Assembly: GCA_051294905.1 (NCBI GenBank)
Contig: CM119377.1
Span: 4,774,001-4,838,000, forward strand
Reading direction: 5' to 3'
DNA length: 64,000 bases
Source: Botryllus schlosseri
Lineage: Eukaryota
In this document: positions 20,767 through 64,000 of the stretch, one piece after another
Layout of the letters: every line of letters starts with the position of its first letter
Numbering within the stretch: position 1 is the stretch's first letter
The notes under the pieces: model-generated
The model's database searches: none
Told to the model about the DNA's origin: nothing
What the model saw: the letters and a program-made list of their open reading frames with translations, nothing else
Translations under genes and position numbers: made by a program

Positions 20767-22450
20767 TCATGATTTATCGGATGTTGCCTTTACATGCGTC
20801 GAGTGGAAGATATCTACTGTCGTGGAATGACAAGGTCGCAAATCTAAATTGTGCGTCCCTAACGATAATTTATCAATCCTTTTAAAATAGTCCAATCCTC
20901 GCCCGATTTTAATGATCCAACCGTTACTAAGTCGGATTTCTCTATCGTGAAGGGAGTCCGAGTAGTAAATTTTCAACGAGACATTCTTTTTCTGGAGTCC
21001 AGAGAAGACGTGCTGTAGGTTTTCTGCTTGCTGGTGCTGGCCCGGATCGCTGGATGTAGTGAGGTGAATTTCACGCAGCTTGCTGCAACGGCACACCAAA
21101 AGCTCGCAGAATTGTAGAAAATTGTTGATCTGTGAGAAATTAAGGATAGTCACCGCAGGCTTTAACAACATTGTTAGTGCACTTCAATGCAGGATGTGCT
21201 ACAATAGTTTGCTGGAGCATTTGAAAATGAACATATTTTTTGAGTGGAACGAGTAATTGAAGGTGACACTGGAATCGAATATAATCCACCCTCATTCATC
21301 AACTATTTGGTTATGATTGGATCTTTCAGGTTACTCCCATTTCAGCTTTTGAAGCAGATTTACTTCCTACTCAAATCGTGGTAGAAATGTTAAAATTCTC
21401 ATTACTCTGATGGCAACCACACTGGTTTTAAATTTGATATTGTTCATGCAGATACGTTCCAAAATTTCGATGCTGGGTGAGCTATTGGCGACTTGAAGTA
21501 TTCTACATCAATTCTTCCACCCATTGCTTGTATTTCTCAAAATACTATATTTCAAGACACCTGATGAAAATTTCGAATGTATGCATCTTCTATAAAAACT
21601 TCAGACACCGAGTCATCCAAGTACGGCCCAAAAATATGCGCATAGCCATTTCCCGTGCTGTATTCCTGTAATGCAAGATTCAATATGTGACGCAGGCAAA
21701 TGCGAAGCAGTGGGAAGTGATTTAAAATGAATTTATAAAGACTTAGTACTATGGGGGAACTCATAGGTGAAATTGAAGTATAGGGTTCGATTTTTGTTAT
21801 GTACTTACGTAGAGAGCTGTAAATTAACAAACCTTTATTCGCTATAATTCAGCATAGAAAGGGGACGCGTTATATTAAAATTTCGTTTTCAACATGGTTG
21901 GTCAATCCACCATTACCTATTGACCCTACTGGAATCACGGTACGTTTTGCCTAATATAAGAAGAGAGCAGTGACGATTTTCCAAGTTGCAGTAGTTCAAT
22001 AAAAAATAATCAAAAAACAAAACATATAGTGTGACAGTGAGCACAGGACACCGATTCCATACAGGCTTATTGAAAGTTTTGCGAGGTCTGCGTTTTCACG
22101 TTCTATGTCACAAATGCACATTCTAGAGACCTGTATGTGAATCTGTTCGTGATATTTGCCTTCCTGTTTCTGTTTCTGAATCGTATCTTTTATTTCCTCA
22201 GCTCTCGTTATGTATTCGGACAATTTCTCGCGAAATCTCTTCTTTTTTTCTTGGTCAGTGCACGCTGCAAAATTTCAACGAATAACTCTCAACTTTGAAC
22301 GAGATACAGAATGTTCCAACATTTTAGAACGACGAGAAGCAAGTCGATCCCTTCTTCGTAACAAGTTAGCGCAGGTTGCAATCTTTTTTCCTGCTCGTGC
22401 TCAATGGCTCGTGATATGATCCTGATAGCTGAAGTTTGAATCCCCTCCAT
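20767..22450 (-). CDS. MITD1: MIT domain-containing protein 1 (ESCRT-III-binding MIT domain + PLD-like domain)
   Basis: Exons (-) 22450-22321, 22264-22131, 21665-21561, 21129-20767, with consistent phases. Motifs [63 protein letters not shown]. Confidence 0.96.
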
Positions 22451-41792: not shown

Positions 41793-44700
41793 TCAAGTCG
41801 TTGACGATATGTTGCTTCTGGTCGGGTGTGGCACGGGGGGTGCTAAGTTGAGAAAATTGGGCGCGAATTTGAGCGCGTTTTTTTCCGCCACCATTCCCGC
41901 GAAAGGCATATGTCCGCCGAAAGGCAACCCGCTGAATTTAGAATACCAATCGCTCGGAAAACACGAGTAAGCCTCCGCGCCTTTGGATGATTTCATGTAA
42001 GGCCATTCGCGAGGCGGTAAAGAGCTTTGCCGCAATAATATTGAAGCGTAGTCCGGGTGAGGTATGATTTGTTTCGTGTTGTTCTGGTCGTGCGGGGATA
42101 GCTTGAGTATTCTGGCGGGGGCTTTGGAGCGGCTTTTGTCGTGCTTGACGCTCTTGTGCTGGGCGAGGTTGTCTTTGCGTTTGGCGGCGTAGCTGCACTG
42201 GTCGCATTGAAAAGGCCTCTCGCCGGTGTGTATGCGGATGTGTTCGATGAGCTTGCTGAGGTTCTTGCCGTGGTATTCGCATTGGGGGCATCTGTAAGGA
42301 GAATGATTATTATGGGTTGTGAGTGTGATATGATATATCCTCGGCCTCTGAAATCAGTTACCGGGACGCAGATGTTTATTTCTCGCGGTTCTTATCACTA
42401 TTTCACTTGGAACCTGCACTTTTCAAAATCATAACGGCAAAGAAGTAGTTTGGCCTAAAAATTGTTCGTGAAATATAGCGGAAGTGGTCGAAAATCATAA
42501 CCTCCTAAGCGGTGCAAGTATAGACAAAACCTACTCCAATGCTCTGGTAAAAGCAGAAGTACTTCGTTGCTGACTACCTTTAGATAGAGCACTCCTTTGG
42601 AGGCCGTAAAAACGGAGTACCCGATTTGACTAATGTGCTACTTGAGACTGTTTTCATGTACTCAATTTCGAATTCAGGACCTATCCTATGATAGCATTAT
42701 CGAATATAAAGTATATAGCCTGCCGATAATCAATCCATAACTAATAACCGGATTTTAATGCCGAACTATTTCGCGCACTTACGGCATAATCAAACCTGCG
42801 ACCTCATGATGTGTCATCCCAAGCTGCTTTCGAGTACCTGCTCATCTACTCTCGTGACGATTATTTTTTCGATTCTCATTACCATTTCCACCATAGCATG
42901 CATGACAGTGGTTTTTGAACCCATGTTCTTATTCGGGAAAGTTCAAGAAACGTTTAACATTTGGTTTAACTCCAACGCAATTACCGCCTGACAATTATTA
43001 AATGCCGTCATAAGCTTACCGCCAACGAGGATAGGTCAGTACTTTTCCGGGTTCAATCGGATTCATAACGTAACCACGTTTGCTTATCAAGAAGCCCCTT
43101 ACTTGTATTGGCCGTCTTCCTTGTGCGTAGACATATGCTCTTGCAGACTTGAGTTGCCGGGCGCGATAAAATCGCATAGTCTGCATTTTAATTCGCGCGA
43201 TAGGCCATTCCAACTGCTGGGGTTGGTGGTGTCGGACTTGATAGAGTCGAGGGTGCGCTTGGGCTCATCGGATGGGTCCTGCTTGATCGAAGAAACGCTA
43301 TCTGTGTACATCGAGATATCGCGTTTTTAAATGATGGTCAAAGTAATCATGGTTATAAGCGTGCTCGCAATTATAATAACAGACATTAACAGCATCGTAT
43401 ATTAATTAAAGCACAGGTGGTTGATGCAGCCAGCTTTGGTACTCATGTAGAAGTAGAAGTTTTTACTCAAATACAAAGAGAAGCTTTGGTAAATTCGGGA
43501 TTGACGCAAAATGACTAATAGCACTACCTACAAATATACGTAAAATCATCGAAAACATATTCACTTATCGTGAAACAAGCGGTATTTCACACAGTTCTTA
43601 TGACAATATCGCTTAAAAACAACTGAACTCTGCACATCTAGAGGTAGATATATTTAAGAAATACGACCACTTGAGTAAATAATAGTGGAAGCGGGGCCTA
43701 GGATATTCAGGGCCTTATCTGGTGCATAACATAATATCGATAGACCCCGGTGGAAGTATAGGCAGAACCAATTTGAGTACTCCAAAATAGCAGAATGACT
43801 TCGTTATACTGGCCACCTCTGATTAAAAGTGTAAGCAATTGATAGGATACGTTATATTTCTTGTGATTCACTATCTGTATCAGCTAATCGTACATTCACC
43901 TGCTGTTATAGTACCGTAAGTTTTCAGGGTGCGATATTCCGCACCAACACCGGCCTGATCACAGCGATAAATCAAACGGACTTATCGTCGTATCAGATAC
44001 TATACAGTCACTTGTTGCTAAGCTTACTCATTTCAAAGCCGATTACGGCGCAAGAAAACATTTAAGGGATGCCTGTTTCCCAGATCGCAAACCGCGCAAG
44101 GGAGTGCGTGTCCAGCGGTCCGCGTGAACTCTTGCCTGCGATTTCATAACGTGGAAAAAGCCCGTCGTGCGGGTGGAATTATTTCTGTACGATTACAAAT
44201 GGATTCGCCATTCGCCATTACGTCCGAGGACCAGACCGTATATACATACGCTCGAAATTCCAATACAGTGCTGCAGGTTGTCTAGCTTTAAATAAGTCTA
44301 CCTTACAGCTATGTGAGGCAAAAACAATTATAGTGATTATGGACAACAAAACCATTTGGGTTCAACTCTCCATACAAATCATATTCAACAATTCGATACA
44401 ATGTTATTTTTTCAAGTTGAATATTTAAATAGGGTTCTAGAAGTACAAAAATTCAATATCGCACCAAATAATATATTCATATTGCCAACGATTGTTGATA
44501 TACAATGTTCATTTCCGTTCTCTACTATAGATACTGACGATTACCCTTAACGAGTGTCAGGCGAAAATATTCCGGTTCATTTCAATATGAATATAATATG
44601 TTCTTAATTCTATTATTAATTCGACAATGTGACTATACTGTTTGTTGCGATGTTGAATATCTTCTGTAATGAAATTCTACATAAACCAGCAACGTAGACA

Positions 44701-47700: not shown

Positions 47701-50700
47701 CCATTTTGCGCGGCAGGCTGCTTCTGCGCGATTCTGTCTTGAAATAACATCGCCAGCTTTGTCTTCAGGCTAAAACGAAGTACCGGTAGTTGAAATCGCA
47801 ATTCCTGCTAGTCATTTTAGATCACTAACTTACGAGTGGATGTGCAACAAGTGACTGCAAGCTTGGGCAACGAAATACGGGTAACAATAGGTCATGTTTA
47901 TAGTTATTGTATTGCAGCGCTCCGATTGTTCAAAACAATGACTATTTTGAAATCGCCGCAGCGCCGTCAGCGAATGTCAGGCGCAAATATTGGTCTTTCT
48001 TTCAATATGAATATATTATTCAATTGCATATTGAAGTTCCGTACCGCTGAGACTCTCTTCATGTTCGCTTACGAAAACGGACCTACGAGAAATCGCGAGT
48101 GACCTCCGGTTACCCAACCGTGCAGTCACGTGATCGTATCTATCGGTGTTAGTGATCTGTATTGTAATCACGCGATCTTACCCGGATTCGGAGTCATTTA
48201 TTATCTCCGGTGTCGTGTTGGATTGACATTGGTCCTTTCCGACTGACGAGTACGTTTGCGTAGGTTTCAAGTCGAGATTGTTGCTATTATTTGTGTTTCC
48301 TGGCGTAATAGCTTCATTCCTACCCCAGCTTCTAGGCCGCTTCGCTTCGCATGCTATTGGCGATGGGCTGGACCGTTTGGAAGGCTTTTTCTCGGGCGTG
48401 CCACGCTCTTTCTTGCTTGAAGTGCGGGATTTGGGAGAAGGCGAGTTATCATCCGTTATTTCTGTGATGTACGCTTGTGATTCCCTGTTATCAGTGTGTT
48501 GCAAGGGTGGCGAAAGCTGCATGAATGCTGGATGTACCGGTGGGAAAGTCGTGTAGGAGAAACCTAGTTTTGTATCCGGGTAGTATCGCGGTGGCGCCAA
48601 CAAAGACAAGTCAACGCTGTGATGTTTCACTTTACCGTTTACTTGATGATACATCGATTCTTGCTGCGGCAGGTACGGGAGACTTGACACGCTTGCAATT
48701 GGCGTAGTTGTTTTACAGTAAGGTCGAGTCTGTGCTGCTGAATGTGCAGCTACGGGGCTGAGGCGCTGACCTTTGTTTGATTCATCCGGCATGTTCAAAT
48801 CTGCCTTGTGAGGAAAACTAGCCCCGCTTTGGCTATCGCGTCTGTTCTGAACCCGGCGCGACCCTTCGTATTTACTCTTCTCGTGTGTTTTCATATGACT
48901 CTTCAAATTGTCCTTTCTGACCGACTTGTACGGACAAAACGGGCACGTGTGGCTTTTCTCCCCGCTGTGAATCCTCATGTGCCTTTGGAAGTGGTACAGA
49001 CGCTTGATTCGCTTGTGACAAATCGGGCATTCGATGTACATGTTCTCGGGATCGGTGCCCTTGTTCATCTCCTTGGCTTCCCGCACTATTGCTGCGTGAA
49101 ACGAATCTATGGGATTGCTGGAATGGCATTTCGAACGCGGGGCTGTCTTTTTTGCGGGGTTTTGTTCTGGTGTTGGTGGCGTAACTCTATTGGGTAGCGT
49201 GTTATGAGGCTTATTACACAGAGTGTCTTTCGGGTATTGCTGTAAAAACGGATTCGGGGCTAGAGCTGGTAGTCCAGGGTGGTATGTGGGATACATGAAG
49301 CTCCAGGGGTTGTAATAAGGGTGTTGCGAAATCCTGGAATAGTCACCCACGCCTGGTAACGGAAACGTGAACGGAGAATGACCGACTGGTGGGTACGGAT
49401 ATACTGCCAGCAGTTTTTCGTGGTCGTTGGCACGGCTGCCGTTCCTATGGTGTGAGTTATATAACGGCGGCGTCTCGTACCTTGCCCTGTTCGCGTAAGG
49501 CGACATCCTCTGCCTTTCAGGGGTGCTTGCGGCCTTTCTGCTGCTGAATAACGGGGCAGTGTCTGCGTTGCGGTTGATCTTGTTAGTCTCAGAAGTTAGA
49601 TTTCTGACTACGACTGGCTTAGAATGTGTGTTGGGTGTCGACAGTCGGGTCGAGTCTACAGAGAGTTTACTCGCGTCTGCATGTCGATCACGGCCAATAT
49701 CACGCCCGCATGAGACGCCATTAACCGCAGCTGACGGAGATGCGGATTTTTCTCCATAGTATCGCCCTTGCGAGGGCGAATACGGCGATTGTTGCGGTCG
49801 GGATTCGCATACGTTATCATCGTTTTGTACCTTTTGAGGTATGCCTTGAATAGGTCTACTGCAATCGCCCGCTCTGTGTGCAGGAGTGGTAATATCAACA
49901 CTGTTCTCAATATTTCGAATGCTCGTATCAGAGCGTTCGTATTTCGCTTCAGTGTGCGTTCCTCTTGAAATTGCTTCAGTCTTAGGTTGATTTGTCTTCG
50001 TCGATTCTTGTAGTAATCTACGCAAAATGTCAATCGGATTCAGCACACCGTTTTTGATGTCGCCCTTCGGTTGGGTATGTCCAAAGAAGTTGAAGTTACT
50101 ATCGGAGGCCAGGGCTTTTTGTGCGGTATCTTTATCAGTAATGTTCTGGGCGATAATTGATCGCAACAGTTCCATGTAGTTTTGGTTGTTGAAGCTGTTT
50201 TTCTCAGTCGTGTCCTCCGATACGCTTGCAGGACTGACGAATGGACTTTCCATTTTACTGTTACCTTCATCTTGATCCATCAAACTGTCTTTCATCGGCG
50301 ATAAACTGTCTGCAGACTCTCGGAACGATGCGTTGCATTCTGCCGCGTCTTCCTGCTGTAACGTCCCGCGTTCGTAGTCGCTTTTTACCGAGAGCGTGCA
50401 GTCAGACACTTCGCCATTCGGATGGTGTGAGTTGCTCTCAATCTGTGAATTGTTATGTTTCTAAGACGATATCTTTACAGGCGATTTCTTTTTGAGAGTC
50501 GGACAGCGCAATGGACTCGTGCAGCAGTGCGCAGGGCACGTTTACGAAGACGCAGTGAAGAATCGGCACTTATAATAATTCGAGACTTCTCAGTTTACGT
50601 GAAAACGACATGAGCATAACATGACATTCAATTGGTATAGTGAGCATGAATTGGATGAGCCCCGATATAATTGTTTGCTATAGACTACCACAGTACATGG

Positions 50701-53700
50701 CCATGAATTCACGTTGATGACAATACCAAATCACAGTTCAGAAACATTCAACTCTCTAAAAATTCGATCATTGCCCAATCCCAGTATATAGGCCTAATCA
50801 TAGTTTATGAGATAGGACACCAGATATACGCACGATGCATGATGTACCAATACATTTTCGTATTACATGAAAAATCGACTTACCCCCGAATCCGTGGCAT
50901 AGGTTCCATCAGGCGAAGTACCGGCAGAAGATGATATCGCATGAGATGTGATGTTGCCCGAATCAACCGAGTCTGGAAAATAACATCAAAATCCATTTTT
51001 AAATGGCGATTCAGTGATATTTGCTCATATATTTTCCGATACACGTGACTGGCTGGTGAAAAGACCTCAGTCTATGCATGAAGTTCAAAATAGATTATAA
51101 ATGGGTTTAACCTATCCCATTATGCGGGGAAATGACATAGCCCGTTGACGGCTCTATTGATAAGTCGAGCACTGATTCGTTTGGATGATTTTAACCTTTG
51201 ACCCTTTCTCTGAACGGCCAATCAGCGTTTCTTAACGTCTCGAAAAAATTTGTTCGGGACAGTGGAACACAGGGGTAATTTCAGATGATACTTAGTTCCT
51301 TAACATTGCGAAAACAACTTATTGTTCATCGTACACCTCCACATAGCTTTGGAAATTGATGATGTTTGGGACAATGCCAGCTCTACCGATAAGAATTGTC
51401 AATTGGTAGAAGATTGCTATGCTGGCAAATTAATCTTTATGCGCGCTGCTTAATTTTCACGGGCTTCCGAAAACCTACAGATTCCGCAAATGCATGTATA
51501 TTTGCAGATATATTTCAGTGCAAAGAATCTGGTTTACAAGTATGAGGATTAGGATCCCAATCGGATACCTAAAATCGTTGGATTTAGCCATTCTTATCTT
51601 CGCTTTGACAAGCGCAATCATTCGTAATTTCACCAGTGACATCGCAAATCGTGGCGTATATGCATTATATCATCCTACATCGTGGCGAATCACATTAATC
51701 AACACTCTGATCTGATTTTCCTAGCAACAATGAGAGGCAGCAGAACCGGCACACATCGCCAGAGGAAGGCAACTCCACTAAATAAAGGATTCACCCCCAC
51801 TTTCATCAGGTGCTTTTCTATTGTTTCAAGCATGGTCGTCAATGCAAATAGGAAGTTTGTTTGTTGTCTTGCCGGCCACGGGGAGTTTGTTTTAGCTTTA
51901 TTGAGGAAGTCCTGGATCCGAAATCTTAATAAGAGAATCTCAAGCACTTTCTGGAGCAGAGCAATAAATAACAAAGTGCATATATTTGCATGCCGAGTTC
52001 ATGCTGAATATATCCCTAAATCCCACGTTTTTACATACTTCCGATTGTGATGTTTTATTTAGACTGCAACACCAATCTACTATGTGCTGTGATGATGCCA
52101 CGCGCGAACAGCACTGGTAGCATCACGGATGAGCCAAGATCGCAATATACAAGAAATCATCATCACCCGTTAACGGCATTGAATGCAATGCAAATTATAA
52201 TACAACGCACCAAATATCTGTGAACTTTTAGAATCCAGATTTATCCCGCGGTATCTTTTTCAAATTTGGTTGTATTCTAGAATTTGTTGAAATCGACGCG
52301 ACTTTCGTGTACGGGCCAATTAAATCCTCCAGTATCGCCCGAGATTTCGATCTGATCATATGAGTTGATGTTTATTTTTTACGAAATTTGGAAGCATTCA
52401 TTTGTAAAGTTTACAACATTGTCGGAACAATAGCCGCGCCGCGTCAGACCGACTTCAAAGTTCCTTTTGCTTTCTCACGTGATACCAGGGTTATCCGCTA
52501 TCCAGGCCTAGGTCGAAACAATTGAAAGGGAGCAAAGACACATACATTTTATTACATCCATACTGTTTGCTTTACTATATAGCATCTTTCGATTTACTGA
52601 ACTTGTTTGGAGGTATACTGTTCCCATTTTTATTTTCATGAGAAATACGCGCATGTGAAATGATACCAGGAAAGTGGTTAATTATAAGAATGTATTGGGC
52701 TAGTATAGCTACGACAATCATGGAAACTATGTAGTTTGACACAGGCATTGAAGTGTGTTCTAGTACGATACTTAAGAATCGCACAAGCGATATATACAAC
52801 GTATCATAAACCAATAGCGAGTACTAATAATATTTCTGTTTTCAGACGATAAAGAGCCATACGGAGTTACTCGGCAACACGGCAATATATAATAAATTAT
52901 TAGGGCCAGTGCGATTTCATAACGCCTCATTTGGCGGTGACCATCTTGCGTAATCCACGTCATCTTTGAGATGCTTGTATATTTGGTGTCGACCAATTTT
53001 AGGAATTAGTTCTATGGCAGTGTTGTTCGCAAAAGATGCCTCTAATTATGCCGGTTACTTGTGTGTATAGTTGTTAAATTCCTAATGCATATGGCCGCGC
53101 TCGCAAAATAACCTTTTCAGCCCGCGTCTATTTACAGAGTGCACCGAATGCGTCTTTGTCAATTGATACCGTGTCGCGGGTGTATGAATTTTGCATGGTA
53201 TTGGGATGTATCAATATTTCATTGTATTATACGCAATCATTAGTAAACCCCAAATGGAAATTGAGAGTTTTGGGGTGTTTTAATGCACTATCATACTACT
53301 TAACCGGAATGAATATTTCAAAGTGTAGCAAATGGCAATAACAAACAAATGACGCGCATTCTCATAAGCTGGATTAACAAAAAGTGAAACGCGCTGTCTA
53401 TGTATGGCACAAAAAGTGTCAGCTATATTGAATGTACTGTGTATTGAATTCCGTGAAACCGATAATGTACGCAATATCATTTCAAAAAATGAATTGGTGA
53501 GTAAACCGAATATTGAAAATGCAAAATGTTTCAGAAGGTTTCAGAAGTATTACGTCATGTGAGGTCCTGTTCGTCTCTTTGTAGTAGCATTATTTGTTTC
53601 TATTTTTTGGTTTTATGGAGATTGTTCCTCAAAGATTTATCCAACATGTTTAAAACACCAAAACACTATAGTTGCGTATGATGCTTGTAGTCGCCTAACT

Positions 53701-56700
53701 ATTCTTTGTTCAGTCACTGACATAGTCAATGCATTCGAAGCTGCATTTTCTGGTACAGCAATATGTGTGCAAAAGTTACACCTTATATATAGATTATAAC
53801 AATCGTATATGGTTTGTGCTGACTTTAGCCGAGACACCGCGACTAGCAAGGCGCTAGGGTAAACCCAAAACATGCAATGCAGGATGTCGATGATATACTA
53901 AATTACGTGAAATTTTTCTTATCGGCGAATATATTTTGTTATGGAACATGGGGGCGTACAATGTTCTGCGACATAGTCTATTGTCCGTGAATTGTTTATT
54001 GTTGCCTGCAAATTAACGCGATTCGATTGTGGAATATGCAGATTATATTACTGCGTGTATAGATAAATATTATCGGATGATACAAGCCAACAAAAGTCTG
54101 TTTGAATACAGCCTTTTCAGAATAATCATCACCTGAGAAACGACATTTTTCCACACATTCATATTCGGGTATTAACGTCATTACAGCCGCAGTTCATCAA
54201 TCACAATGGAATTACAATGTACGAAGGGCTTACGAGAAAAATGCTTACTGCCGCTTTATTTGCAGTTAGTCAAAATACGTTGGCTTTTCGAATTCGATGA
54301 CTAACTAATGTCGCTATACTAATCACATTGCGGTAACGTTGCGGTGGCTACACGGTGCATGGCGTAATGAGCTTATACAAGGCGTGCGAAAATTGAGCCC
54401 GTAGTCATACCATGTCATGGGAATATTAATGTAAAAAAACAATAGGACGCAGTCAGCAAAGTTTTCAATGCATAATTTCAACTACTTCATCAAGTGATCG
54501 CTACAATCATGAGTAAATGTGAGAATTACCTTGCAATTGTGATACTGTATGAAAGTTTCGTGGTTCTAGACCACACATTATGCCGCGCAGAGTGGTTTTT
54601 CCGCGCTGCTGCGATATCAAATCATTCCATTCTGCGTTAATGATTCCACTATGTAGGAAATAGTACACTATTACCGAAATCTTGAGTAATTCAGCGTTGA
54701 AAAAGAGATAGTAGGGATATTGTACTTAGGTTTGTGTGGGTATTATTGCCCTAACCGACAATCCACTAAGGGGAAAAGTACAATGAACGAACAAGTTACA
54801 TCACAAAACAACCACTCGAATCAAAGCAAGCCGAATCGCGATGGGTCACGAAATAATAGGGTTCATGGTCGGCGGGTTAGGCAGAAAAGTTTGCGGTTAG
54901 GGTAAAACGGGCTCCGAAAAGGTGGGGTGTTAGATGCGGGTGAAAGTACGCATGAAATATGTAAAAAGTGGTGACTTATGTGGTCGGTGTGATTGAAGTC
55001 GAACGCATATCGGTTCAAAGTTGGATACATTCAACTCCGGCGATCTGTATCGTACGCGGGCCATACAACACATTAACGCCTCATATTATTCTCTGTAAAC
55101 AAGTGATTGCTTATGTAAAACAAAAGCAACCATTCCTACAACGTAATACATTTAATGGTCCTAAGAACGGGCTATATAGGGCTGCACGTTTTGCTGTCGT
55201 CACTACGTTGAGTAGACATCTCTACCGGGCATTTAAAGTGAAGTCATCCCTTGAAGAGGTAAAGATTGTACACCCCCATATCTCCCGTATTTTGTATCGC
55301 ATGACAATATTTGTTTAGTGCAATATGTGTTCCCTTGATCGCAACAGAAAACGTGTGTACTGTGTATGATGTATATACAAAATGAATCAAAGCCAGCCCT
55401 ATATGCCCGAGCCTTCTGTAGTACACAATTTAGCGCTATGTATCAAATATGTCTTCAGGGATAACACACTATGTCTTCTTCATCTGGGACATATCAGCCA
55501 CGCCGAATTTTGCACCTCGAAGGAAACACCTTCATGTCGTTTATTCACCCGGTTTATTCATCACCGGAAAAGTCAGGCCACGTGAATAGGCAGTGTGATG
55601 ATTATGAGGGCCGTATCGTACAGGTACTACATCCTGTGTCAAAGCTGCGCTACCCCATCGAGACCGATTACACACACCCGACATGTTTATCCAAACCTGG
55701 AGTATTAATATGCCTCGAAAGTACTGCCTAACACAATCACAGTGGCAATATCTGCAGAAAAGATAACATGACATCGTATAGCGGCTAAATAATTATTGCG
55801 ATTAACTCAAATGTGCTAATGAATATTGGTTTTTAAAAAGTATGCGTGCGATACAAACTTTCTTATTCACAAGCCTACTGAAAGGGTACTGCGAAACCAG
55901 GAAATGCGTATTGGAGATCTATATGTATTTTGATAACGCCTATTCTCCACTACTCTTTCGGCAGTAACAAGTTCCCGTGATGCATGAGGTCATTAAGAAA
56001 ATAAGTCGCAATAAAGTTATCGCTACATTTCATATGAGTAACTGTATTAGTCTATCGCTCTGTAAGCATTAAGATTTAGGACTAAGGTGCACTGAGAAGG
56101 AGTGAGAGGTATACTAACTCGATTACTGATCCAAAAAGACGTGGGTGTTGGACGCATTAGTATTCATTACTGCGGCAATTGGCGCATATAGACTCATGTG
56201 AATTAGACAAGCGTTATCCGAATGATTTGCAAATTTATACTTCTTATGACTGGGGTATACGGTAACCCGGAAATGATAAGCATTCGCATGTGATTCACGG
56301 AGTTATTTTGCAAAGCTCGGTATTAGCCTAAGTAATGTTTATACATACGTGATAGAGTATTTCGTATATACTGTCTCAAAATTATTTGGTGATTTAATTT
56401 GTTATCGACCACGCTGAACTCGAAATATATCTTCAAATCGGTTTATTGCTATATAACAATAACTGCAATTAGGACCGAATACGCTATATTAAAACCATAA
56501 CTATTGCATAATGCACTCTGACTCTTCAATATTCGTTATTCGGTAACATGCGTTCTATATACAGTTCAATCACTTCATATCACTACGGAAGAAAGAAGAC
56601 ATTGCTGATCCACACCCTGGCACGTAACGAGTTGAAATTTGCATTCGGAGAGGCAAAGAAACTTTGCAAGAGGTTCAACAATACAACACCCCCACGAATT

Positions 56701-59700
56701 GCTTATGAAAACATTGACAATATGACCAGGAAAAAATTGAGAAATCACCCTCGCTAATGGGAAAATGATATAGCGCGTGATATTGTGTATCATCATAACG
56801 TTCGACTTTAGTAATATATTTATGAACATGTTGGAAATTCCTACACACCAAAATATTTACTACATGTAGTACACTGCATTCTTTTGTAGTTTCCCATAAC
56901 ATAATCCACCAAACTATACTACCGAGCGTGGGATCTTTCTTGGCGCAGGAACGGGAAAGGGGGTGTACTATAACTCGTTGAAATAACTTTTTCATGGATA
57001 GATGAGCGGAAATCGATATTTCCTGAAAGTGCTCACCACGTACATTTAGGTACTCCGCTGCACTTTATACATAATAATTATAGCATAGCGCGCAATAGAA
57101 TCTGATTGTAAGAAGGAAAATAGTTTCATTCATTCAATATGTTATGTAAAATGACCGCAGGAAATTTCTCAGGGATTGTCGCATCGCAGACACACGGCAA
57201 TCAAATTGGTGTGGATCATACGAATGATTGATTGTCTTTGCATCCGGCATTAATGAGACGGACTCGTAAATGGATGTGGAGGATATGTGTGTGCATCTTA
57301 CGACATATTGAAATGAAAACAAAACATTTACATACGAGGAAGCAGATTCATGGCTGTGATAGCAATTTGGAGCGCATCACCTTATGGGGATGGTACAATA
57401 TGCAAATCACGAGAGGTGCTATTTTCAAATCTTTAAGAAACCTCTATCCTTCGAACAATAATGCATCGATCGCAATAGATTTGACTATGCCTAGACAGCC
57501 GGCATCGTCTGTGCCGCGTGGCTCCAACTGTAGAGTTTACACGTATGCGGATATTGAAAACGCAGTCATTCGGACTGTTACTTCCAGGGTACGACACAAT
57601 CTTCATTGTTCATTGTGACAATTTCGAACTAACCGTCTTTTTGTATGTAAGAAAATCGATATTTTGTTTTCTTATAATACGCGAATCAGTTTAAACGTAG
57701 TTACCGTGTGTGCATAGATTGGCTGGTCGGCAAGCAACTACAGAAACTAGGTACATTTTTCAGCACTTTGCCGCTACACAGCACTAGACACGGGATGCGC
57801 ATTGATACTAGCCGATAAGAGATTATATATAGCCCCTGTTGAATGCGGGTGCCATTAACCATGATGATACGATGATTGACTATTCAGTTACAGTATCGAC
57901 GAAAGGGTGCTAGCCGCGTTGTGTCACATCAAAAGCAAGATCGCAGCCCTAATCGTGTTCGGTGACCTCCGCCGTTTTTAGGGTGCCGACTATTCGGATT
58001 GAGGTATCGTTGGAAGCGTATGCTAAGTGTCTTTTTCGCGAGAAGATATCTTCTCGCGTGTCCCGTTTCCCCCTGTTATTACCAAATGAACTGGTTAAGT
58101 TTGGTTTCGAAGCAAGGTAGAGGAATATCAATTGCGAAAAGTGAAACGATGATTAATATCATTCGATCATAATGATAGGCGAATGCAGAACAGTTGCTTC
58201 ATTCACGCCGATTCTGATAGTTTCTCATCAGCAACAAGATCTAATTGCTTATCCTCCCTAATTTGTCAATATCCAGAATGTAAATCCCGAAATGTTAATA
58301 GCCAGCGAAGCAGCTTGCAGCACACAATATTCGTCGCGTATTGTAGGTTCGAAGGTATAGCAGATCATATTTTGCAAATTCTAGCTCCGCAGAGCGGGTT
58401 CATATGCACAGTGGAGACACGCTATTCTTTCAACACCGGGACAATGATTTGATCCGCGTGTAAAATCCTTTATGCCGCTGAATAGGGCTGGTGTATTCAC
58501 ATATCAGTTAAGAATCTTGCTGTATCGCTACCCTAGATTTGGAATTGTATTGGCTCCGTACCTCGGGGATTGCGGTATTGGATTACAATGCATAAGAGGA
58601 CGAAAGAGGAAATCCTAATCACAGAACATCATACTAGTTAGAATGCAGCTTTCCGCATGGATTCTTGTGGATGAGGCGATCGTTGAATCGGCGCTATTGT
58701 CCCGTATTTCGAGAGAATTCAAACCGTATCCGCTCGACACGCGCGGTCTTCAATTACTTTGCTCAATTCACAAATTGAAACGGGACTGCATCGACAGAAT
58801 ATGTCAAAGAGATTCAAGAGCCCGGTGCAATTTTGAAGATTGAAGCAATTGAGATGCTACTGGAAATGCACAAAAACACGGTGGCCCTAGGGCAATATAC
58901 TTATCATTTAGGTGAAAGAATGCTCTTCAAGCCACCAAAAACAACCATCAGACAATGACACTAACAATAAGGTTACACCCGTGAAAACAAATCGATTTCT
59001 TCGACAATCAGCGAAAAATGGTTTCATCCCGAAATGTCATGCCGCGAGAATGCCGCGTGACGAAATCGTCGACGGAGTATTAACATATCATGGATCATAC
59101 AAGATTGTATTACTCATTGACGAATGGAGACATTGATGTATTATGTTTTTGGGAGGGCTATACCCAGAAATCGTCCGCACTTTTCAATTATAAGATTAAA
59201 ATTCGGGTATTTTCGAAGGTCGTTATTAAGTAGCCCACTCAGGCACTTCTGCCTTCGGTTAAGCCTTCTTAACGTTGTCGCGAAACGTAAACAGATTCCA
59301 AGAAAAAAGGGAAACTTGAAAAAAACTTTATATTTACGTTACGAGATTTTATGAGACTGTACGGTTGCCATGACATAAAGATATAAATATACTCGGCGTT
59401 GGAGCGAAATGGATTAAGAATTATAAGGAAAGAAAGGCCTGCAGAATTCCGATCCATCCAACATCCGCCAATTATGCGATACGCCACATATGGGTTCGCC
59501 TCATTAAGCGACCCGGGAGTGATGACATGTCGCATCTCGGCTTAATTGTTGGGTTTAACTTCTGAAGTCGACATTGACACCCGATCGCGAGCATCGCAAC
59601 GGCTGCGTTTCGGTGTAGCATCAAATTCGCTAGCTACGCAAGGGAGCAATTAAACCCTCAGAAACAAACTTAAAATTGCACGTTTTGGCGAAATTACTTT

Positions 59701-60655
59701 AGGTATGGAAGCTAATTGGAGAGGAGCATGTTTACACGGAATTTTTGACTGACTACTATCCAAAATGGACAATTTATAATATCATCAACGCTGGGTGCAA
59801 TGTATTATTGTATTGGAGCGGGTGTTTGCATGGAGTTCACCATTTCTATATAAAACAAATTTCAATACAAAGCCAATCCGTCCGTTGCTATAAACGCTAT
59901 CACAAAATGGCGGACATAAATAGGAATCGCCATCCCCGACGCCGTGCAACATAAAGTTCATAGTAAAACCCCGTAAAAAATATTTCAAACGCTCTAGTTC
60001 CATGTAGAAACGCATCGGCCCGGTTTTCTGTCAACTTTTTATCCTATATCAAGGATTCCGGAACTTTTACGAGGCAGTTGTAATAACCTGCAATAATCAC
60101 GGATGACTCGAATTCCAATGTTGCGATATTTGCCAGGGAGAGATGATATATACGGGTGGTGACACTGTCCCAGTTGTTCTATTTACCCTTGTCAAACATA
60201 CTTATATTAAATATTTTCTTACCATATATTTTCAAATCAATAAAACGATTCAAAATAAACTTAAGGCTTTATAGTCTTCCTCGCAAAAAGGCGAAAGCAA
60301 ATATCTTCAGCCCAAAGTGGTTTTCACCATATTTCCTATAAACGCCCCCAACGAGACGATGAGAAATTGGGGTGAAAGATTTCTGTTCGATGCCTTATCC
60401 ATTTATGCTCATATAACTGTCTGTGACGGCCGGAGGAAAATATTTTTTCGCTAACTTTGCAACTCTATCAAGCCAATTACACAAAATAAATCACACCGCA
60501 TTCTATACCATGATATTCCTTTGAATATAGTGCAGATTGATTTCGTGCTATCTTCCTAGCTATAGCGGTAATATTCCAGATGCAATAAAATCGGTACCTT
60601 CGCTCTGGATTTCATCGGGAATATGTCTTGGTCTCTGTTGCTTCGTCCTTGGCAT
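41793..60655 (-). CDS. ZNF827: ZNF827-like C2H2 zinc-finger transcriptional regulator (~1123 aa, 5 fingers in two clusters)
   Basis: Exons (-) 60655-60598, 50972-50884, 50442-48182, 47733-47666, 45068-44871, 43301-43103, 42291-41793. All GT-AG, phases 1,0,2,1,1,2 join into one 3372-nt ORF. N-terminus MPRTKQQRPRH. Fingers CPICHKRIKRLYHFQRHMRIHSGEKSHTCPFCPYKSVRKDNLKSHMKTH and ..HTGERPFQCDQCSYAAKRKDNLAQHKSVKH resemble vertebrate ZNF827 as I recall it. Orthology was not computed. Confidence 0.85.
43412..43821. mobile_element. Degenerate hAT-like MITE (AGTAGAAG-rich family with further fragments near 7485, 34530, 42480, 45500)
   Basis: CACAGGTGG...CCACCTCTG termini. Flanks AATTAAAG / ATTAAAAG. 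Confidence 0.5.
58640..59540 (+). pseudogene. Possible decayed MUS81/ERCC4-nuclease-like sequence, antisense in ZNF827-like intron 1
   Basis: Across two frameshifts: GSYKIVLLIDE (59092-59124), RLKFGYF (59193-59213), NVVAKRK (59271-59291), RYE..MRLYGCHDIKI*IYSALE (59337-59404). Order and spacing resemble the ERCC4 motifs VDxxE, LxxGDF, VERK, GRFxEQxxRLxxC..xYLVE. Judged by eye only. Confidence 0.4.
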
Positions 60656-61640
60656 CGCGGAAAGCCAACCAGTGAACAGGCGAGCCCAGACTGTCTCCAA
60701 TCAAGATAGCTTATCAACAAAGAGCCGTTATGATTTGATTTCTAAAAGATATCTTCGTATTCATGCGATCTGATTTCGTGTGACTAGAAGACGCAGTTCA
60801 AGACGTATATGTCATATTAATTAGTAGTGGGAGACATTTTGATGCGAGAGAACAAAAGAAAAACTGCATGGTGGGAAATGTATTCTTGTCTGTTGCTCCA
60901 TCTACCGGCACAGAAGGGAGCTTAAGTTCTGGCTGTTTCGAAAAGTGTCTGTATAAATTTACACAATAGACCAGGGGTTCTCAAACATTTTAACTGTGTA
61001 CCGTATCGGTTTATAAGCATGCATTCCGTAGTCCATAAAAATAAGGTGAATCCGAATTTTATGCACGACTATCAGCTGTACAGTCAAATTTTAGGGTTGG
61101 AACCATATCTAGGTCTAACTGCAAAGAAAACTTTAGCAAGAAGAATTTCCAATACTTAGGTGCTAACCGGGATACTATCTTTGTATCGAATTTTCCAAGA
61201 AAATAACCTGGCATACATCTTACTTATAATAGATGTATGGCCTGGAGAACGTGACCTTGTTCTGGCGCAATGCAGAACCGATTTTTCAGAAAATCTGCTC
61301 CACAGTAATCACCGGCAGAGTCATAAACCAGCCTGCTTACATACATTGCATATGTGCACAAGCTAATCACTGAAGACTGAAATGGCGCAAAACATTAACC
61401 CTTCATAATTTTCACTTCAACACCTGACGAAGGAGTGGAGCTCCGAAGCTCGTGTGATAAATAAAATTATTACGCTGTAAGTGGACGCTAAATAAGGTGT
61501 GAAAGCAACCAAGACCTTCACAATGAGAAATTCCTATCGCAAATGCATTTAAATGACACTGGTTGAACTAATCCGAGACCTACAGTAGGCTACGAGAAAA
61601 ACTTACCTCCGCGACCTCCGAGAAACATAAATACACTAAA
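60656..61640 (-). other. Probable 5' UTR portion of the ZNF827-like gene (acceptor before 60741, upstream non-coding exon ending 61607)
   Basis: TATCTTTTAG acceptor at 60742. Strong donor GAG|GTAAGT at 61607/61606. Confidence 0.4.
61418..61500 (+). mobile_element. Penelope-like terminal relic with minimal hammerhead-like motif
   Basis: CAC-CTGACGA-A-GGAG(TGGAG)CTCC-GAAG-CTC-GTG, followed by ATAAATAAAATTATTACGCTGTAAG. Confidence 0.45.
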
Positions 61641-64000
61641 TGAGACTAGTGACGTTACACAGCATTGTATAATCTCGAATATTACGTCACACAGCAATGT
61701 GAACCTTGGGTAAAAGCATGGTGGTTTATGCACCAAAAACTACGTTAACCTTTTTCTCGCTTTGCACATAAAATCGTAGTGGCAGAAAATTGTCGCAGTG
61801 TCGGAAAACTGTGGTTGTTCGCGTAACCCCGCAATTTTCTCGCGTACCCCATATTGATAATCCCTTACCCTAATAAACACTTGCGTGACCTTTGACACGG
61901 ACCAACTAGATTCAAACAAGATGTGAACGCAAAAAATCGGTGGAAGAATGAAGGCTTTTAGCAACATTACATACAACATTTTACAACATACATGGTTCTC
62001 AGTGGATATAGCCTCACACCTTGCCACTAGATACCTCGTGGATTTACTTTTCAAATACCAATGACACTACGATCTATTGCGCAATCTACACTACTCTACA
62101 CTGACTATTAAAAAGGCGGGAGGCCAGACCTTTCGGACGGTTGAAAACGTGAAGAAGTCTTTTCAGATAGACACTTTGGACATTCACTGGGTATAGTGCA
62201 GTCTTGCTGATAGTAACGGAAATCCTATATATTCTATACGCATCGATGAATTTTAAGTCGTTTTTACTGGTTTACGATTATTCGTCGGTTTGACTATAAT
62301 ACCATGAAATATCCATGTAGCATGGTTCAAGCCTATATAAACGCATCCTTCACAACGTAACTTACGTGAAGCCGCAATAACGGTGAGATTTAAACCGAAG
62401 GTCAACGATCTGTTGTTCCGGAAGATCCTGTTACATTCTATATGCATTCGTCAAATATGACAGGAAAGTATGTCAGCATATCAATCATTATTTAAACAAA
62501 GATTGACTGTGCACTTTGCATATCAGGTTTGTTAGATTGCACCAAGTAGCAAGAATCCAAGCTAACCCAACCATAGCTTGTCTGCACCATTTCATTACAC
62601 GCAGACTCAAACGAGGTCGAACGTCAGGGCATAAACTAAACGCTGAGAGCGACCGCCGACGCCTGTCGGGGCGTAGCCTGAAAAAGAAATTGAGGGAACC
62701 AAATATTTGATGAATTAAAAGACGCCCCCCTTTTAACGATAACAATCTATGGACTTGAGATCATATTGGGTGATTAACACAATTTTTGGGGTGGTTTTAT
62801 TCCCTTTTTTAAGTTAATGGTTAAATTTGGTTTATACTGGTACATGCGCTCTTGGATCGCAATTTGACGGTGTGTTGATCGAATAACAAAAAACTCTTCC
62901 TGATACTCATAACGGTTTCCAGATCTAATCCTTTTATGTGCGTGTTATTTTGGATTGGATCGTTTTGGCACCCTTCGCATAACAGCTACGTTGTGCAATA
63001 TCTGTTTTCGTCTCCCAGTCGCAGAGCGACACAAGCGATCGCTGACCGAGAGCTGGTGTGTTCGGCCTGATGATATGATTAATACGCTGATACTGATCAG
63101 TAAAACTATCTCTACATTCGTATCGTGTCGGTACAACTAAAGTTGTGAGCGTAGCGACTTCTGTGAAGATGCTGCTGACCTCGGTCTCGGTGCATGCCGC
63201 GGCTCTTTAGCCTCCCGCTACCTCGCTTCTATCATATTTCACTCAATTGCATTTTGTAATGCATACTGTTGATATGCACAGCTGGTAAATAAATGTTCTC
63301 TCTCTCTTTCTCATTAAACGTAAATAGGAACATCGCGGCAAAGTTCTCGTTCTCACAGCTACGCGAGATTTAAATTCGGGCCCTACCAACATACATGAAA
63401 GAATCAGAAACCTTCAAAGCAAAGGCCTACTCCACGATTAGATTCATCTTTTTGGGTGTAATTTTACATTCATCAAATTCAAGTAGCCATCTGTCTTTAT
63501 TATTGGGTATTGGGCTATTACCGCGCCACGACCCACCAAGACATACAATCAAGTTTTGGGCCATATAACATGTGACTCCAAGAAGTGTGCCAGAACGATC
63601 GGCAGCGAGAAAACCTTGGCCGAAAAGGTCTATGCCCTTATGCTGACCGAAGACTTCGTTATATATACAAAATACATATAGGTTTAATTGTCCAATTTAT
63701 GCCAGTGAAAAAATACCAATTTGAAATCGTGTGCGTCTCTTAGTTTAGAAGCTCACGTTTGAGCGATTCTATATTTTTTGTTATAGCTGACTGGAAGTCA
63801 CGAAATAACATCATGTAACGAAGTCATATCAACGGGTCCGCCCGCCAAAGATGTTTAATCATTATTTACGGGCGCTTCCGTTTTCAAGACACTTCACTCG
63901 GCTCTACCGGTGAATCTAATTGCGTGAGTAGAGAGGACAATAAATTGATGGCATAATATATATGCAATCGCCGATCTGATTGACCGATTTTATCATAAAT

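What the first reader, a model, noticed from the sequence alone, without database searches (positions are those of the whole stretch)
60623..60655. ZNF827-like N-terminus is an exact histone H3-tail mimic (P-R-T-K-Q vs A-R-T-K-Q)
Seen in sequence: a tiny first coding exon, about 10 kb from the rest, encodes MPRTKQQRPRH. Established: FOG1/SALL/BCL11/ZNF827-type N-termini (M-S/P-RRKQxxP) recruit NuRD by binding the RBBP4/7 pocket that also binds the H3 tail, and Met is normally removed before Pro. Here the canonical RRK is RTK, so residues 2-5 after Met removal are identical to H3 R2-T3-K4-Q5 in the same register from a free N-terminus. Inference: the factor may be a substrate or decoy for H3K4 methyltransferases, LSD1, T3 kinase (Haspin) or PHD readers. 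That could make NuRD recruitment switchable by modification.
Basis: partly seen in the sequence, partly recalled or inferred. Interest (0 to 1): 0.72.

Follow-up and report, generated by a model that had tools for sequence, protein, structure and literature searches.

The report
H3-like NuRD motif, tunicate zinc-finger gene
This stretch is the real, spliced first coding exon of a tunicate zinc-finger gene whose protein starts M-P-R-T-K-Q, a conserved one-letter variant of the known NuRD-recruiting tip (RRKQxxP) that copies histone H3's R-T-K-Q and probably docks on RBBP4 as H3 does; nothing yet shows it is modified like H3.

Summary
On the minus strand, an ATG at 60655 opens a 58-nt coding exon (MPRTKQQRPRHIPDEIQSE, GT donor). 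RNA-derived contigs from three studies join 60598 directly to 50972. The RTK codons do not vary in those runs.

The same tiny phase-1 exon lies upstream of the orthologue in Ciona and in three unnamed tunicate assemblies. It is also annotated in Clavelina. All of these read MPRTKQ, with synonymous Thr codons. Styela clava reads MPRHKQ, so T is old and constrained but not obligatory.

Published structures put the second Arg of RRKQxxP in the RBBP4 axial channel. H3 and PRDM3/16 use an R-x-K spacing instead, with a solvent-exposed Thr or Ser. A complex prediction (0.79 against a best control of 0.02) places R3 in that channel and K5 on E126. Q6, P9, R10, H11 and I12 sit on FOG-1's contacts, and T4 is not among the confident contacts.

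My reading is a hybrid NuRD-interaction motif: H3/PRDM-type at the tip and FOG-type from K5 onward. It is a new variant of a known kind.

The 'ZNF827-like' label is unsupported: the protein has 2+3 fingers, its family block is found in only 29 proteins, and every named one is a tunicate protein. The proposed crosstalk with H3 writers, erasers and readers is untested speculation.

The parts
60656..60787 (-). 5' leader covered by RNA-derived contigs. It contains a 16-codon out-of-frame uORF (ATG 60764, ending about 60714) and an in-frame stop 17 codons before the main ATG.
60598..60655 (-). First coding exon, 58 nt, phase 1: MPRTKQQRPRHIPDEIQSE plus 1 nt. Codons 1-12 carry the variant NuRD-interaction motif M-P-R-T-K-Q-x-x-P-R-H-I.
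60623..60655 (-). The 33 nt of the finding: codons 1-11, MPRTKQQRPRH.
50973..60597 (-). Intron 1 (9,625 nt), GT at 60597-96 and AG at 50974-73.
50884..50972 (-). Coding exon 2, 89 nt (DSVDSGNITSHAISSSAGTSPDGTYATDSG), gtaagt donor, ends in phase 0.
48182..50442 (-). Large exon 3. The acceptor is inferred at cacag|ATT and the donor at GG|gtaaga. It is about 750 aa, mostly low-complexity, and holds the conserved block ...HAAIVREAKE..DPENMYIECPICHKRIKRLYHFQRHMRIH... with C2H2 fingers 1-2.
43102..43218 (-). Exon with C2H2 finger 3 (LKCRLCDFIAPGNSSLQEHMSTHKEDGQYK). Boundaries are approximate.
41793..42323 (-). Last coding exon with fingers 4-5 (…CPQCEYHGKNLSKLIEHIRIHTGERPFQCDQCSYAAKRKDNLAQHKSVKH…) and the stop codon. 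The 5' boundary is approximate.

Best explanation
The stretch is the start of the first coding exon of a C2H2 zinc-finger transcription-factor gene (2 + 3 fingers; orthologues Ciona LOC104266396 and Styela LOC120341096). Its first 12 residues, M-P-R-T-K-Q-x-[K/R]-P-R-H-[I/Y], are a lineage-specific variant of the N-terminal NuRD-interaction motif RRKQxxP. The second Arg, which normally enters the RBBP4 axial channel, has become Thr. The most likely mechanism is as follows. The motif still docks on the acidic top face of RBBP4/7 and so recruits NuRD (possibly other RBBP4/7 complexes). It does so in a hybrid register. R3 enters the axial channel and K5 the E126/E179 pocket, with one spacer residue between them, as in histone H3 (R2-T3-K4) and PRDM3/16 (R2-S3-K4). 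Q6, P9, R10, H11 and I12 keep the FOG-1 contacts. Shown here: the exon, the splice, conservation of the motif and the intact RBBP4 pocket. Inferred: binding, register and NuRD recruitment. After Met removal (a rule for Pro at position 2, not tested here) the mature end P-R-T-K-Q would be in H3's register.
For: The exon and splice are supported by RNA contigs of three studies. Orthologous phase-1 first exons of 58-64 nt read MPRTKQ in Ciona and in three unnamed tunicate contigs found 10-12.5 kb upstream of the big exon. Clavelina is annotated with MPRTKQTKPRHI. The Thr codon varies synonymously (ACG/ACA/ACT), while K5, Q6, P9, R10 and H11 are invariant. RTK occurs on both sides of the deepest split in the family tree that has first exons. 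The genome's own RBBP4 (L021, intronless, 433 aa) keeps all 13 residues that contact FOG-1 or H3. Complex prediction with that RBBP4 and Clavelina residues 20-60 scored 0.79 against a best control of 0.02. That mark was reached by 51 of 78 solved complexes and 2 of 108 mismatched pairs; partner pLDDT was at least 48 and run agreement at least 29%. Low-error contacts were R3 with Y181/E231, K5 with E126, Q6 with E395, P9/R10/I12 with N397, and H11/I12/V13 with E41. T4 was not among the confident contacts. Literature: FOG-1 Arg-4 fills the axial channel, K5 binds E126/E179, Q6 binds E395, R10 binds N397 and Q11/I12 bind E41 (PMC3020727). H3 Arg-2 uses the same channel (10.1101/303537) and H3K4 the same two Glu (PMC10148413). 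PRDM3/16 M-R-S-K bind RBBP4 like H3, with Ser3/Thr3 solvent-exposed, KD about 3 uM (PMC6379669).
Against: Mutating FOG-1 Arg-4 abolishes NuRD binding (PMC3020727, PMC6644156). In ZNF512B the second Arg is essential (PMC11602157). Loss of a single basic residue in BCL11B (R3S) cost 8.7-fold in affinity and all detectable NuRD/PRC2 co-IP (PMC6644156). A motif with only two of the three basic residues may therefore bind weakly or not at all. The complex prediction may be memory of solved RBBP4-peptide complexes; it used a Clavelina peptide with this genome's RBBP4, and peptides are outside the test's calibration. No binding experiment exists. Oikopleura relatives lack the motif altogether.
Confidence: 0.6

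Rival explanations
1. Decayed or repurposed motif. Loss of the channel Arg (R4 to T/H) destroyed RBBP4/NuRD binding in the tunicate lineage. The basic N-terminus is conserved for another reason, such as nuclear import, another partner, or translation/start context.
For: Arg-4 is essential in FOG-1 and the second Arg is essential in ZNF512B (PMC3020727, PMC11602157, PMC6644156). Position 4 is T in six species and H in Styela. The larvacean relatives have no such motif.
Against: K5, Q6, P9, R10 and H11 are invariant at exactly the spacing of the RBBP4-contacting residues of FOG-1. A generic basic patch or NLS would not need Q6 or P9. R-x-K ligands of the same pocket are crystallographically established (PMC6379669). 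The complex prediction passes with the expected contacts.
Confidence: 0.18
2. One reading: the mature P-R-T-K-Q end is a working H3-tail mimic beyond RBBP4. It would be methylated or demethylated at K5, phosphorylated at T4 by an H3T3-type kinase, or read by H3K4me0 PHD fingers or LSD1, making NuRD recruitment switchable or titrating H3-tail machinery.
For: Residues 3-6 equal H3 2-5 and T4 is constrained (6 of 7 species, synonymous codon changes). There are precedents for N-terminal H3 mimics read by H3 machinery: PAF15 V-R-T-K with the UHRF1 PHD finger (PMC7060239) and SNAG P-R-S-F with LSD1 (PMC5066116). H3K4me3 lowers RBBP4/Nurf55 binding 10- to 100-fold (PMC6379669, PMC10148413), so K5 methylation would act as a switch if it occurred.
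Against: No modification or reader data exist. Styela's RHK breaks the mimicry while keeping the rest of the motif. The first residue is Pro rather than Ala. Residues 7-12 follow the FOG-type motif, not H3. Conservation of T could simply reflect a need for a small polar spacer, as with Ser in PRDM3/16 (PMC6379669).
Confidence: 0.1
3. T4 is a generic phospho-switch that turns RBBP4 binding off. It would replace the regulatory Ser-2 of canonical motifs, which is Pro here, and would have no relation to H3 enzymes.
For: Ser-2 is described as a known PTM site of the canonical motif (PMC6644156). This protein has Pro at position 2 and a Thr next to the channel Arg.
Against: Styela has His at position 4, which is not phosphorylatable by Ser/Thr kinases. 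The Thr/Ser side chain is solvent-exposed in H3-type complexes (PMC6379669), so the effect of phosphorylation on binding is uncertain. There are no data.
Confidence: 0.1

Closest known systems
N-terminal NuRD-interaction motif (FOG-1-like motif, RRKQxxP) of FOG-1/2, SALL1-4, BCL11A/B, ZNF827, ZNF296
   Same: It sits at the extreme N-terminus of a multi-zinc-finger regulator. R3, K5, Q6 and P9, and the basic/hydrophobic 10-12 (R-H-I against R-Q-I or Q-H-I/L), keep the same spacing. The predicted contacts of K5, Q6, P9-I12 equal those of FOG-1 in PDB 2XU7 (PMC3020727).
   Different: Position 4, the Arg that fills the RBBP4 axial channel and is essential in FOG-1 and ZNF512B, is Thr (His in Styela). 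Only two of the three basic anchor residues remain.
PRDM3/PRDM16 N-termini (M-R-S-K-A-R-A-R-K) bound to RBBP4, PDB 6BW3/6BW4
   Same: An Arg and a Lys separated by one small polar residue, at the very N-terminus of a zinc-finger regulator. Published as mimics of the RBBP4-H3 interaction (PMC6379669).
   Different: In PRDM3/16 Met1 is retained and stands in for H3 Ala1, and an Ala stands where FOG-type motifs have the Pro. The tunicate motif keeps the FOG-type Q-x-x-P-R-H-I tail and probably loses Met.
Histone H3 N-terminal tail (A-R-T-K-Q-T-A-R-K)
   Same: R-T-K-Q is identical. After Met excision the Arg would be the second residue of the chain, as in H3. H3 binds the same RBBP4/Nurf55 pocket through R2 and K4 (10.1101/303537, PMC10148413).
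   Different: Pro instead of Ala at position 1. Residues after Q differ from H3. There is no evidence of modification.
ZNF827
   Same: Pro at position 2 (MPR.KQ), and a layout of N-terminal motif, central finger cluster and C-terminal finger cluster (PMC10933417).
   Different: ZNF827 has nine fingers (3 + 6) against five (2 + 3). No ZNF827 sequence was retrieved by any search. The family's signature block matched only 29 of 1.84 billion representative proteins, none of them named ZNF827. Orthology is not shown.
SNAG domain (P-R-S-F-L-V) of SNAI1/GFI1/INSM1 and PAF15 (V-R-T-K)
   Same: N-termini of non-histone proteins that imitate H3 residues 1-4 after Met removal. SNAG also starts P-R-[S/T] (PMC5066116, PMC7060239).
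   Different: Their partners are LSD1 and the UHRF1 PHD finger. SNAG needs Phe where this motif has Lys. Nothing links the tunicate protein to those partners.

Membership tests
N-terminal NIM (RRKQxxP, FOG-1-like motif) | The motif starts at residue 2-3 of the protein, directly after the initiator Met | tested here: met
   The ATG at 60655 has an upstream in-frame stop, and RNA contigs cover it.
N-terminal NIM (RRKQxxP, FOG-1-like motif) | Second Arg (position 4), which inserts into the RBBP4 axial channel | tested here: not met
   Thr in the window, Ciona, Clavelina and three unnamed tunicates; His in Styela.
N-terminal NIM (RRKQxxP, FOG-1-like motif) | Lys5, Gln6 and Pro9 at canonical spacing | tested here: met
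   K5, Q6 and P9 are invariant in all seven orthologues.
N-terminal NIM (RRKQxxP, FOG-1-like motif) | Direct binding to the top pocket of RBBP4/7 | tested here: inconclusive
   In silico only: score 0.79 against a best control of 0.02, with contacts on Y181/E231, E126, E395, N397 and E41. This may reflect memory of solved complexes. The pocket residues are conserved in this genome's RBBP4.
H3-type RBBP4 ligands (H3 tail, PRDM3/16) | Arg and Lys separated by one small polar residue, with the Arg as second residue of the chain | tested here: met
   R3-T4-K5 in sequence. The register after Met removal is inferred from the Met-aminopeptidase rule and was not tested.
H3-type RBBP4 ligands (H3 tail, PRDM3/16) | Ala (not Pro) further along the peptide, giving the H3-like backbone path | tested here: not met
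   The FOG-type Pro9 is present and invariant. PMC6379669 describes Ala in H3 and PRDM3/16 against Pro in the others.
ZNF827 orthologue | Nine C2H2 fingers in a central cluster of 3 and a C-terminal cluster of 6 | tested here: not met
   2 + 3 fingers in the window gene, Ciona, Clavelina and Styela, against PMC10933417.
ZNF827 orthologue | Sequence homology outside generic finger positions | tested here: inconclusive
   No ZNF827 appeared among hits of two word-indexed searches. An exhaustive profile search with the family block gave 29 proteins, and all the named ones are tunicate proteins. No vertebrate ZNF827 sequence was available for direct comparison.
SNAG domain (LSD1 hook) | P2-R3-S4-F5 with the aromatic residue entering the LSD1 active site | tested here: not met
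   Position 5 is Lys, not Phe. Binding to LSD1 was not tested.

The most novel reading that the evidence does not exclude
The mature N-terminus P-R-T-K-Q of this tunicate zinc-finger factor is treated by the cell as a histone H3 tail. T4 would be phosphorylated by an H3T3-type mitotic kinase and/or K5 methylated and demethylated by H3K4 enzymes, so that RBBP4/NuRD recruitment by a sequence-specific factor is switched by histone-code enzymes. Alternatively, the factor titrates H3K4me0 readers.
Probability: 0.08. Interest if true: 0.75.

Novelty: new variant of a known kind. Interest (0 to 1): 0.4.

Why it matters
RBBP4's top pocket is known to accept two ligand registers: R-K (FOG-1, BCL11A, SALL4, PHF6) and R-x-K (H3, PRDM3/16). 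This tunicate family is a natural chimera of the two. It has the H3/PRDM-type tip and the FOG-type tail, and it has been kept across ascidian lineages on both sides of the family tree. It offers a ready-made test of whether the channel Arg can be supplied from position 3, and of how much affinity the Q-x-x-P-R-H-I tail adds. It also shows that motif scans for RRKQxxP will miss functional relatives. If the peptide were also touched by H3-tail enzymes, it would link histone-code enzymes directly to a transcription factor's co-repressor choice, but nothing yet points that way.

Tried and rejected
1. ZNF827 orthology.
- Two word-indexed homologue searches returned only tunicate or unnamed relatives plus generic poly-zinc-finger proteins.
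- Pfam gave only generic C2H2 models.
- Two language-model atlas searches gave unspecific zinc-finger clusters such as RREB1, BCL11, hunchback and ZEB2.
- One literature search on ZNF827/charlatan/REST led nowhere.
- An exhaustive profile search with the 34-residue family block found only 29 proteins, and cluster look-ups added no names.

2. A third homologue search from a 423-aa relative showed that the short relatives are larvacean (Oikopleura). They lack the motif, so they give no outgroup state for position 4.

3. A first scan of 10-kb flanks of seven orthologous loci found the exon only in Ciona. Walking a further 10 kb upstream on three contigs found three more. The sister species (P0001) has no DNA available.

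4. A second candidate, MPRRKQNKP, on G000 contig C11 has no zinc-finger ORF within 40 kb downstream. I leave it unassigned.

5. A whole-genome count of ATG-x-R-R-K-Q-x-x-P matches (7) was below the reversed-pattern control (13 + 16). The count alone means nothing; only the extended similarity of individual hits is informative.

6. The scan's own notes hold nothing on NuRD or RBBP4 in this genome.

7. A search for a citable Haspin consensus motif did not yield one.

Full report
**What is at the coordinates**

On the minus strand the window reads ccgcg ATG CCA AGG ACG AAG CAA CAG AGA CCA AGA CAT ATT CCC GAT GAA ATC CAG AGC GAA G|gtaccg.
- The finding's 33 nt (60655..60623) are codons 1-11, MPRTKQQRPRH.
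- The coding exon is 60655..60598 (58 nt, phase 1).
- An in-frame stop lies 17 codons upstream.
- The only upstream ATG in the transcribed leader (60764) is out of frame and opens a 16-codon uORF.
- The degenerate pattern for M-x-R-x-K-Q matches once in the 64-kb window, where 0.06 matches are expected by chance.

**Is the exon used, and is it spliced to 50972?**

I laid contigs of four public runs on 58000-62500.
- Three runs from three studies (X1, X2, X3) each have a contig that matches 60598 up to 60787, 60750 or 60732 and then leaves the genome exactly at 60598.
- The 30 loose letters, reverse-complemented, are the sequence that starts at 50972 behind the acceptor ttttccag. The match is 30/30 for X2 and 28/30 for X1.
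- A contig that skips 9,625 nt at GT...AG must come from spliced RNA, so the junction 60598|50972 is confirmed.
- Within the motif codons the runs show only one difference, a silent change at 60629 in Pro9. The RTK codons are the same in the assembly and in all three runs.

Exon 2 (50972..50884, 89 nt) ends in phase 0. The large exon most likely starts at 50442 (cacag|ATT) and ends at 48182 (GG|gtaaga). Two further finger exons lie at about 43218-43102 and 42323-41793.

**The gene**

The large exon carries two C2H2 fingers inside a very conserved block (…HAAIVREAKE..DPENMYIECPICHKRIKRLYHFQRHMRIH…YKSVRKDNLKSHMKTHEK). The 3' exons carry three more fingers.
- Homologues are Ciona intestinalis LOC104266396, a Clavelina lepadiformis protein, Styela clava LOC120341096, an 80%-identical sister-species ORF, and several unnamed ENA/Logan ORFs.
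- Short relatives of about 370-420 aa, carrying only the first finger pair, include two Oikopleura dioica proteins.
- An exhaustive profile search with the 34-residue block upstream of and into finger 1 found only 29 proteins with E <= 0.001 among 1.84 billion representatives. These were the ones already seen plus a few short fragments.
- Every named member is a tunicate protein.
- Pfam sees only generic C2H2 models.

**The 'ZNF827-like' label**

Human ZNF827 has an N-terminal RRK motif and nine fingers in clusters of 3 and 6 (PMC10933417). This protein has 2 + 3 fingers. No ZNF827 came up in any search. The resemblance rests on Pro at position 2 and on the general layout. Orthology is not shown, though I could not compare directly with a vertebrate sequence.

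**Conservation of RTK**

| Source | First residues | Evidence |
|---|---|---|
| Window (this genome) | MPRTKQQRPRHI | |
| Ciona, 4.4 kb upstream of the NCBI model's start, same strand | MPRTKQRKPRHI...Q\|gtaata, phase 1 |; 0.02 chance matches expected |
| Clavelina (annotated; 19 extra residues in front of the conserved Met) | MPRTKQTKPRHI | |
| Styela clava (annotated) | MPRHKQQRPRHI | |
| Three unnamed tunicate contigs, 10.4-12.5 kb upstream of the large exon | MPRTKQTKPRH[I/Y] | |

- All five DNA copies end in a phase-1 donor after 58-64 nt.
- The Thr codon is ACG, ACG, ACA, ACT and ACG, and the Pro2, Arg3 and Lys5 codons also vary synonymously.
- Positions 7, 8 and 13 onward change freely. 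M1-P2-R3, K5-Q6 and P9-R10-H11 are invariant.
- In a tree of the conserved block, the window, its sister species, Styela and one Logan sequence form a supported clade (96/94). Ciona, Clavelina and the ENA group lie outside it.
- RTK therefore occurs on both sides of that split, and Styela's His is most simply a later change.
- T4 is not a private variant and looks constrained, but the Styela case shows that exact identity with H3 is not indispensable.
- The Oikopleura relatives have no such N-terminus, so they do not give the ancestral state.

**What the literature says about position 4**

- In the RbAp48-FOG-1 structure, Arg-4 extends into the axial channel (Glu-231, Tyr-181) and Arg-3 sits in a neighbouring pocket. 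Lys-5 binds Glu-126, Glu-179 and Asn-128. Gln-6 binds Glu-395, Arg-10 binds Asn-397, and Gln-11/Ile-12 bind Glu-41. Mutating R3, R4 or K5 loses NuRD binding (PMC3020727).
- In ZNF512B and FOG-1 the first Arg is dispensable, while the second Arg, the Lys and the Pro are essential (PMC11602157).
- BCL11B R3S lowers affinity 8.7-fold and abolishes detectable NuRD/PRC2 co-precipitation (PMC6644156).
- By these rules the tunicate motif fails a defining feature of the canonical motif.
- The same pocket also takes a second register. H3 inserts Arg-2 into the channel (10.1101/303537) and places Lys-4 on the same two glutamates (PMC10148413).
- The N-termini of PRDM3/PRDM16 (M-R-S-K...) do the same in crystal structures. 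Ser3, like H3 Thr3, is solvent-exposed and only spaces the backbone. KD is about 3 uM, against 1.5 uM for H3 (PMC6379669).
- The tunicate R3-T4-K5 has exactly this spacing, while K5-Q6-x-x-P9-R10-H11-I12 keeps the FOG-1 spacing. Lys-5 is the anchor common to both registers, so the two halves are compatible.

**Test of that idea**

This genome encodes an intronless RBBP4 (L021, 433 aa). It aligns without gaps to human RBBP4 (offset 6) and keeps all 13 contact residues (E41, E126, N128, E179, Y181, E231, D248, E275, N277, E319, K376, E395, N397).

I ran complex prediction with this RBBP4 and residues 20-60 of the Clavelina protein (MPRTKQTKPRHIV...).
- It scored 0.79, 0.78 and 0.80, against a best control of 0.02.
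- That mark was reached by 51 of 78 solved complexes and 2 of 108 mismatched pairs.
- Partner pLDDT was at least 48, and the runs agreed in at least 29% of contacts.
- In human numbering the low-error contacts are: R3 with Y181, G180 and E231; K5 with E126; Q6 with E395; P9, R10 and I12 with N397; H11, I12 and V13 with E41.
- T4 and T7 are not among the confident contacts.
- This is the hybrid register predicted above.
- Caveats: similar complexes are solved, so the pass may be memory. Peptides were not part of the calibration. The peptide and RBBP4 come from different tunicates. The score is not an affinity.

**Context in the same genome**

A pattern search of the 495.5-Mb assembly found candidate canonical N-termini.
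- MSRRKQKRPKHA, with FOG-type C2HC fingers 12-16 kb downstream.
- MSRRKQSKPQHV (SALL-like).
- MSRRKQGKPQQL (BCL11-like).
- MSRRKQTKPFKV.
- MPRRKQNKPPTL.

The total count is below the reversed-pattern control, so only the extended similarity of individual hits is informative, and none was checked against RNA. They suggest that the canonical RRK form persists in other genes of this animal and that the Thr is specific to this gene.

The sequence statement is right: P-R-T-K-Q against A-R-T-K-Q, in the same register after Met removal. Met excision before Pro is an established rule and was not tested here.

Mimicry of the H3 tip by non-histone N-termini has precedents.
- PAF15 V-R-T-K is read by the UHRF1 PHD finger like A-R-T-K (PMC7060239).
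- SNAG P-R-S-F is bound by LSD1 (PMC5066116).
- PRDM3/16 bind RBBP4 (PMC6379669).
- H3K4me3 weakens RBBP4/Nurf55 binding 10- to 100-fold (PMC6379669, PMC10148413), so K5 methylation would be a switch if it happened.

But there is no evidence that any H3 enzyme or reader touches this protein. Styela's His argues against a strict requirement for the H3 sequence. A small polar spacer is all that the RBBP4 register needs. I rate this reading at about 0.1.

**Verdict**

This is a real, expressed first exon encoding a conserved tunicate variant of the NuRD-interaction motif. Its tip has the H3/PRDM3-type R-x-K spacing and its tail is FOG-type. RBBP4 binding is likely but unproven. The ZNF827 label is unsupported, and H3-modification crosstalk is speculative. 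It is a new variant of a known kind, of moderate interest.

Noticed in passing
G000 loci L009 (C5:13380994, minus), L012 (C11:17493800, minus), L013 (C12:4461336, plus), L014 (C12:14855508, minus), L011 (C11:11071860, plus): Candidate canonical N-terminal RRKQxxP starts in the same genome: MSRRKQKRPKHA (FOG-type C2HC fingers 12-16 kb downstream in L017), MSRRKQSKPQHV (SALL-like), MSRRKQGKPQQL (BCL11-like), MSRRKQTKPFKV and MPRRKQNKPPTL. The last has no finger ORF within 40 kb downstream. None was checked against RNA.
   Followed up: partly
L021 (G000:C2:11895484-11898693), L022 (G000:C2:18752337-18755546), L023 (G000:C7:5265648-5268797): There are two intronless RBBP4/7-like ORFs. L021 is intact (433 aa) with all ligand-contact residues. 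L022 (436 aa from a GTG) has an unrelated C-terminal tail after ...DGPPELL, so it may be broken or spliced. A third, partial CAF1C_H4-bd match lies on the window's own contig about 430 kb away.
   Followed up: partly
L001:5592-5655 (Ciona) and P0031 residues 1-19 (Clavelina): The NCBI model of Ciona LOC104266396 lacks the conserved MPRTKQ first exon, which lies 4.4 kb upstream of the model's start. The Clavelina model starts 19 residues before the conserved Met, so it is probably over-extended.
   Followed up: partly
P0056, P0058 (Oikopleura dioica) and P0008, P0011-13, P0057, P0059: Larvacean-type relatives of about 370-420 aa keep the finger pair almost letter for letter. They lack the N-terminal motif and the three C-terminal fingers, and share instead a G-P-K-L-G-[ST]-T-L-L-T start.
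   Followed up: no
A1 profile: The block IVREAK..G.DPENMYI.CP.C.K[RK] in front of finger 1 is found in only 29 of 1.84 billion representative proteins. It is an unusually narrow and very strongly conserved signature of unknown function.
   Followed up: partly
P0016: A 513-aa member of this eukaryotic zinc-finger family is filed in NCBI as a protein of a Planctomycetota metagenome-assembled genome. It is probably a mis-binned eukaryotic contig (2.2 kb).
   Followed up: no
window 60733 and upstream (minus strand), run X3: The X3 contig leaves the genome at 60732 with 29 unmatched letters on its 5' side, while X1 and X2 continue collinearly to 60787 and 60750. It may be an alternative 5' end, a trans-spliced leader or an assembly chimera.
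   Followed up: no
window 60714-60764 (minus strand): A short upstream ORF (16 codons, out of frame) lies in the transcribed leader of the gene.
   Followed up: partly
window 20767-21171 (minus strand) and 11847-13613 (minus strand): A neighbouring ORF carries a MIT_C domain (E 2.6e-39), so it is probably an exon of an MITD1-like gene. A 588-aa ORF at 11847-13613 has no Pfam match.
   Followed up: no
window 58866-59034, run X5: One contig joins 58960 to 59034 on opposite strands (fold-back joint) inside intron 1. This is probably an inverted repeat or an assembly artefact.
   Followed up: no
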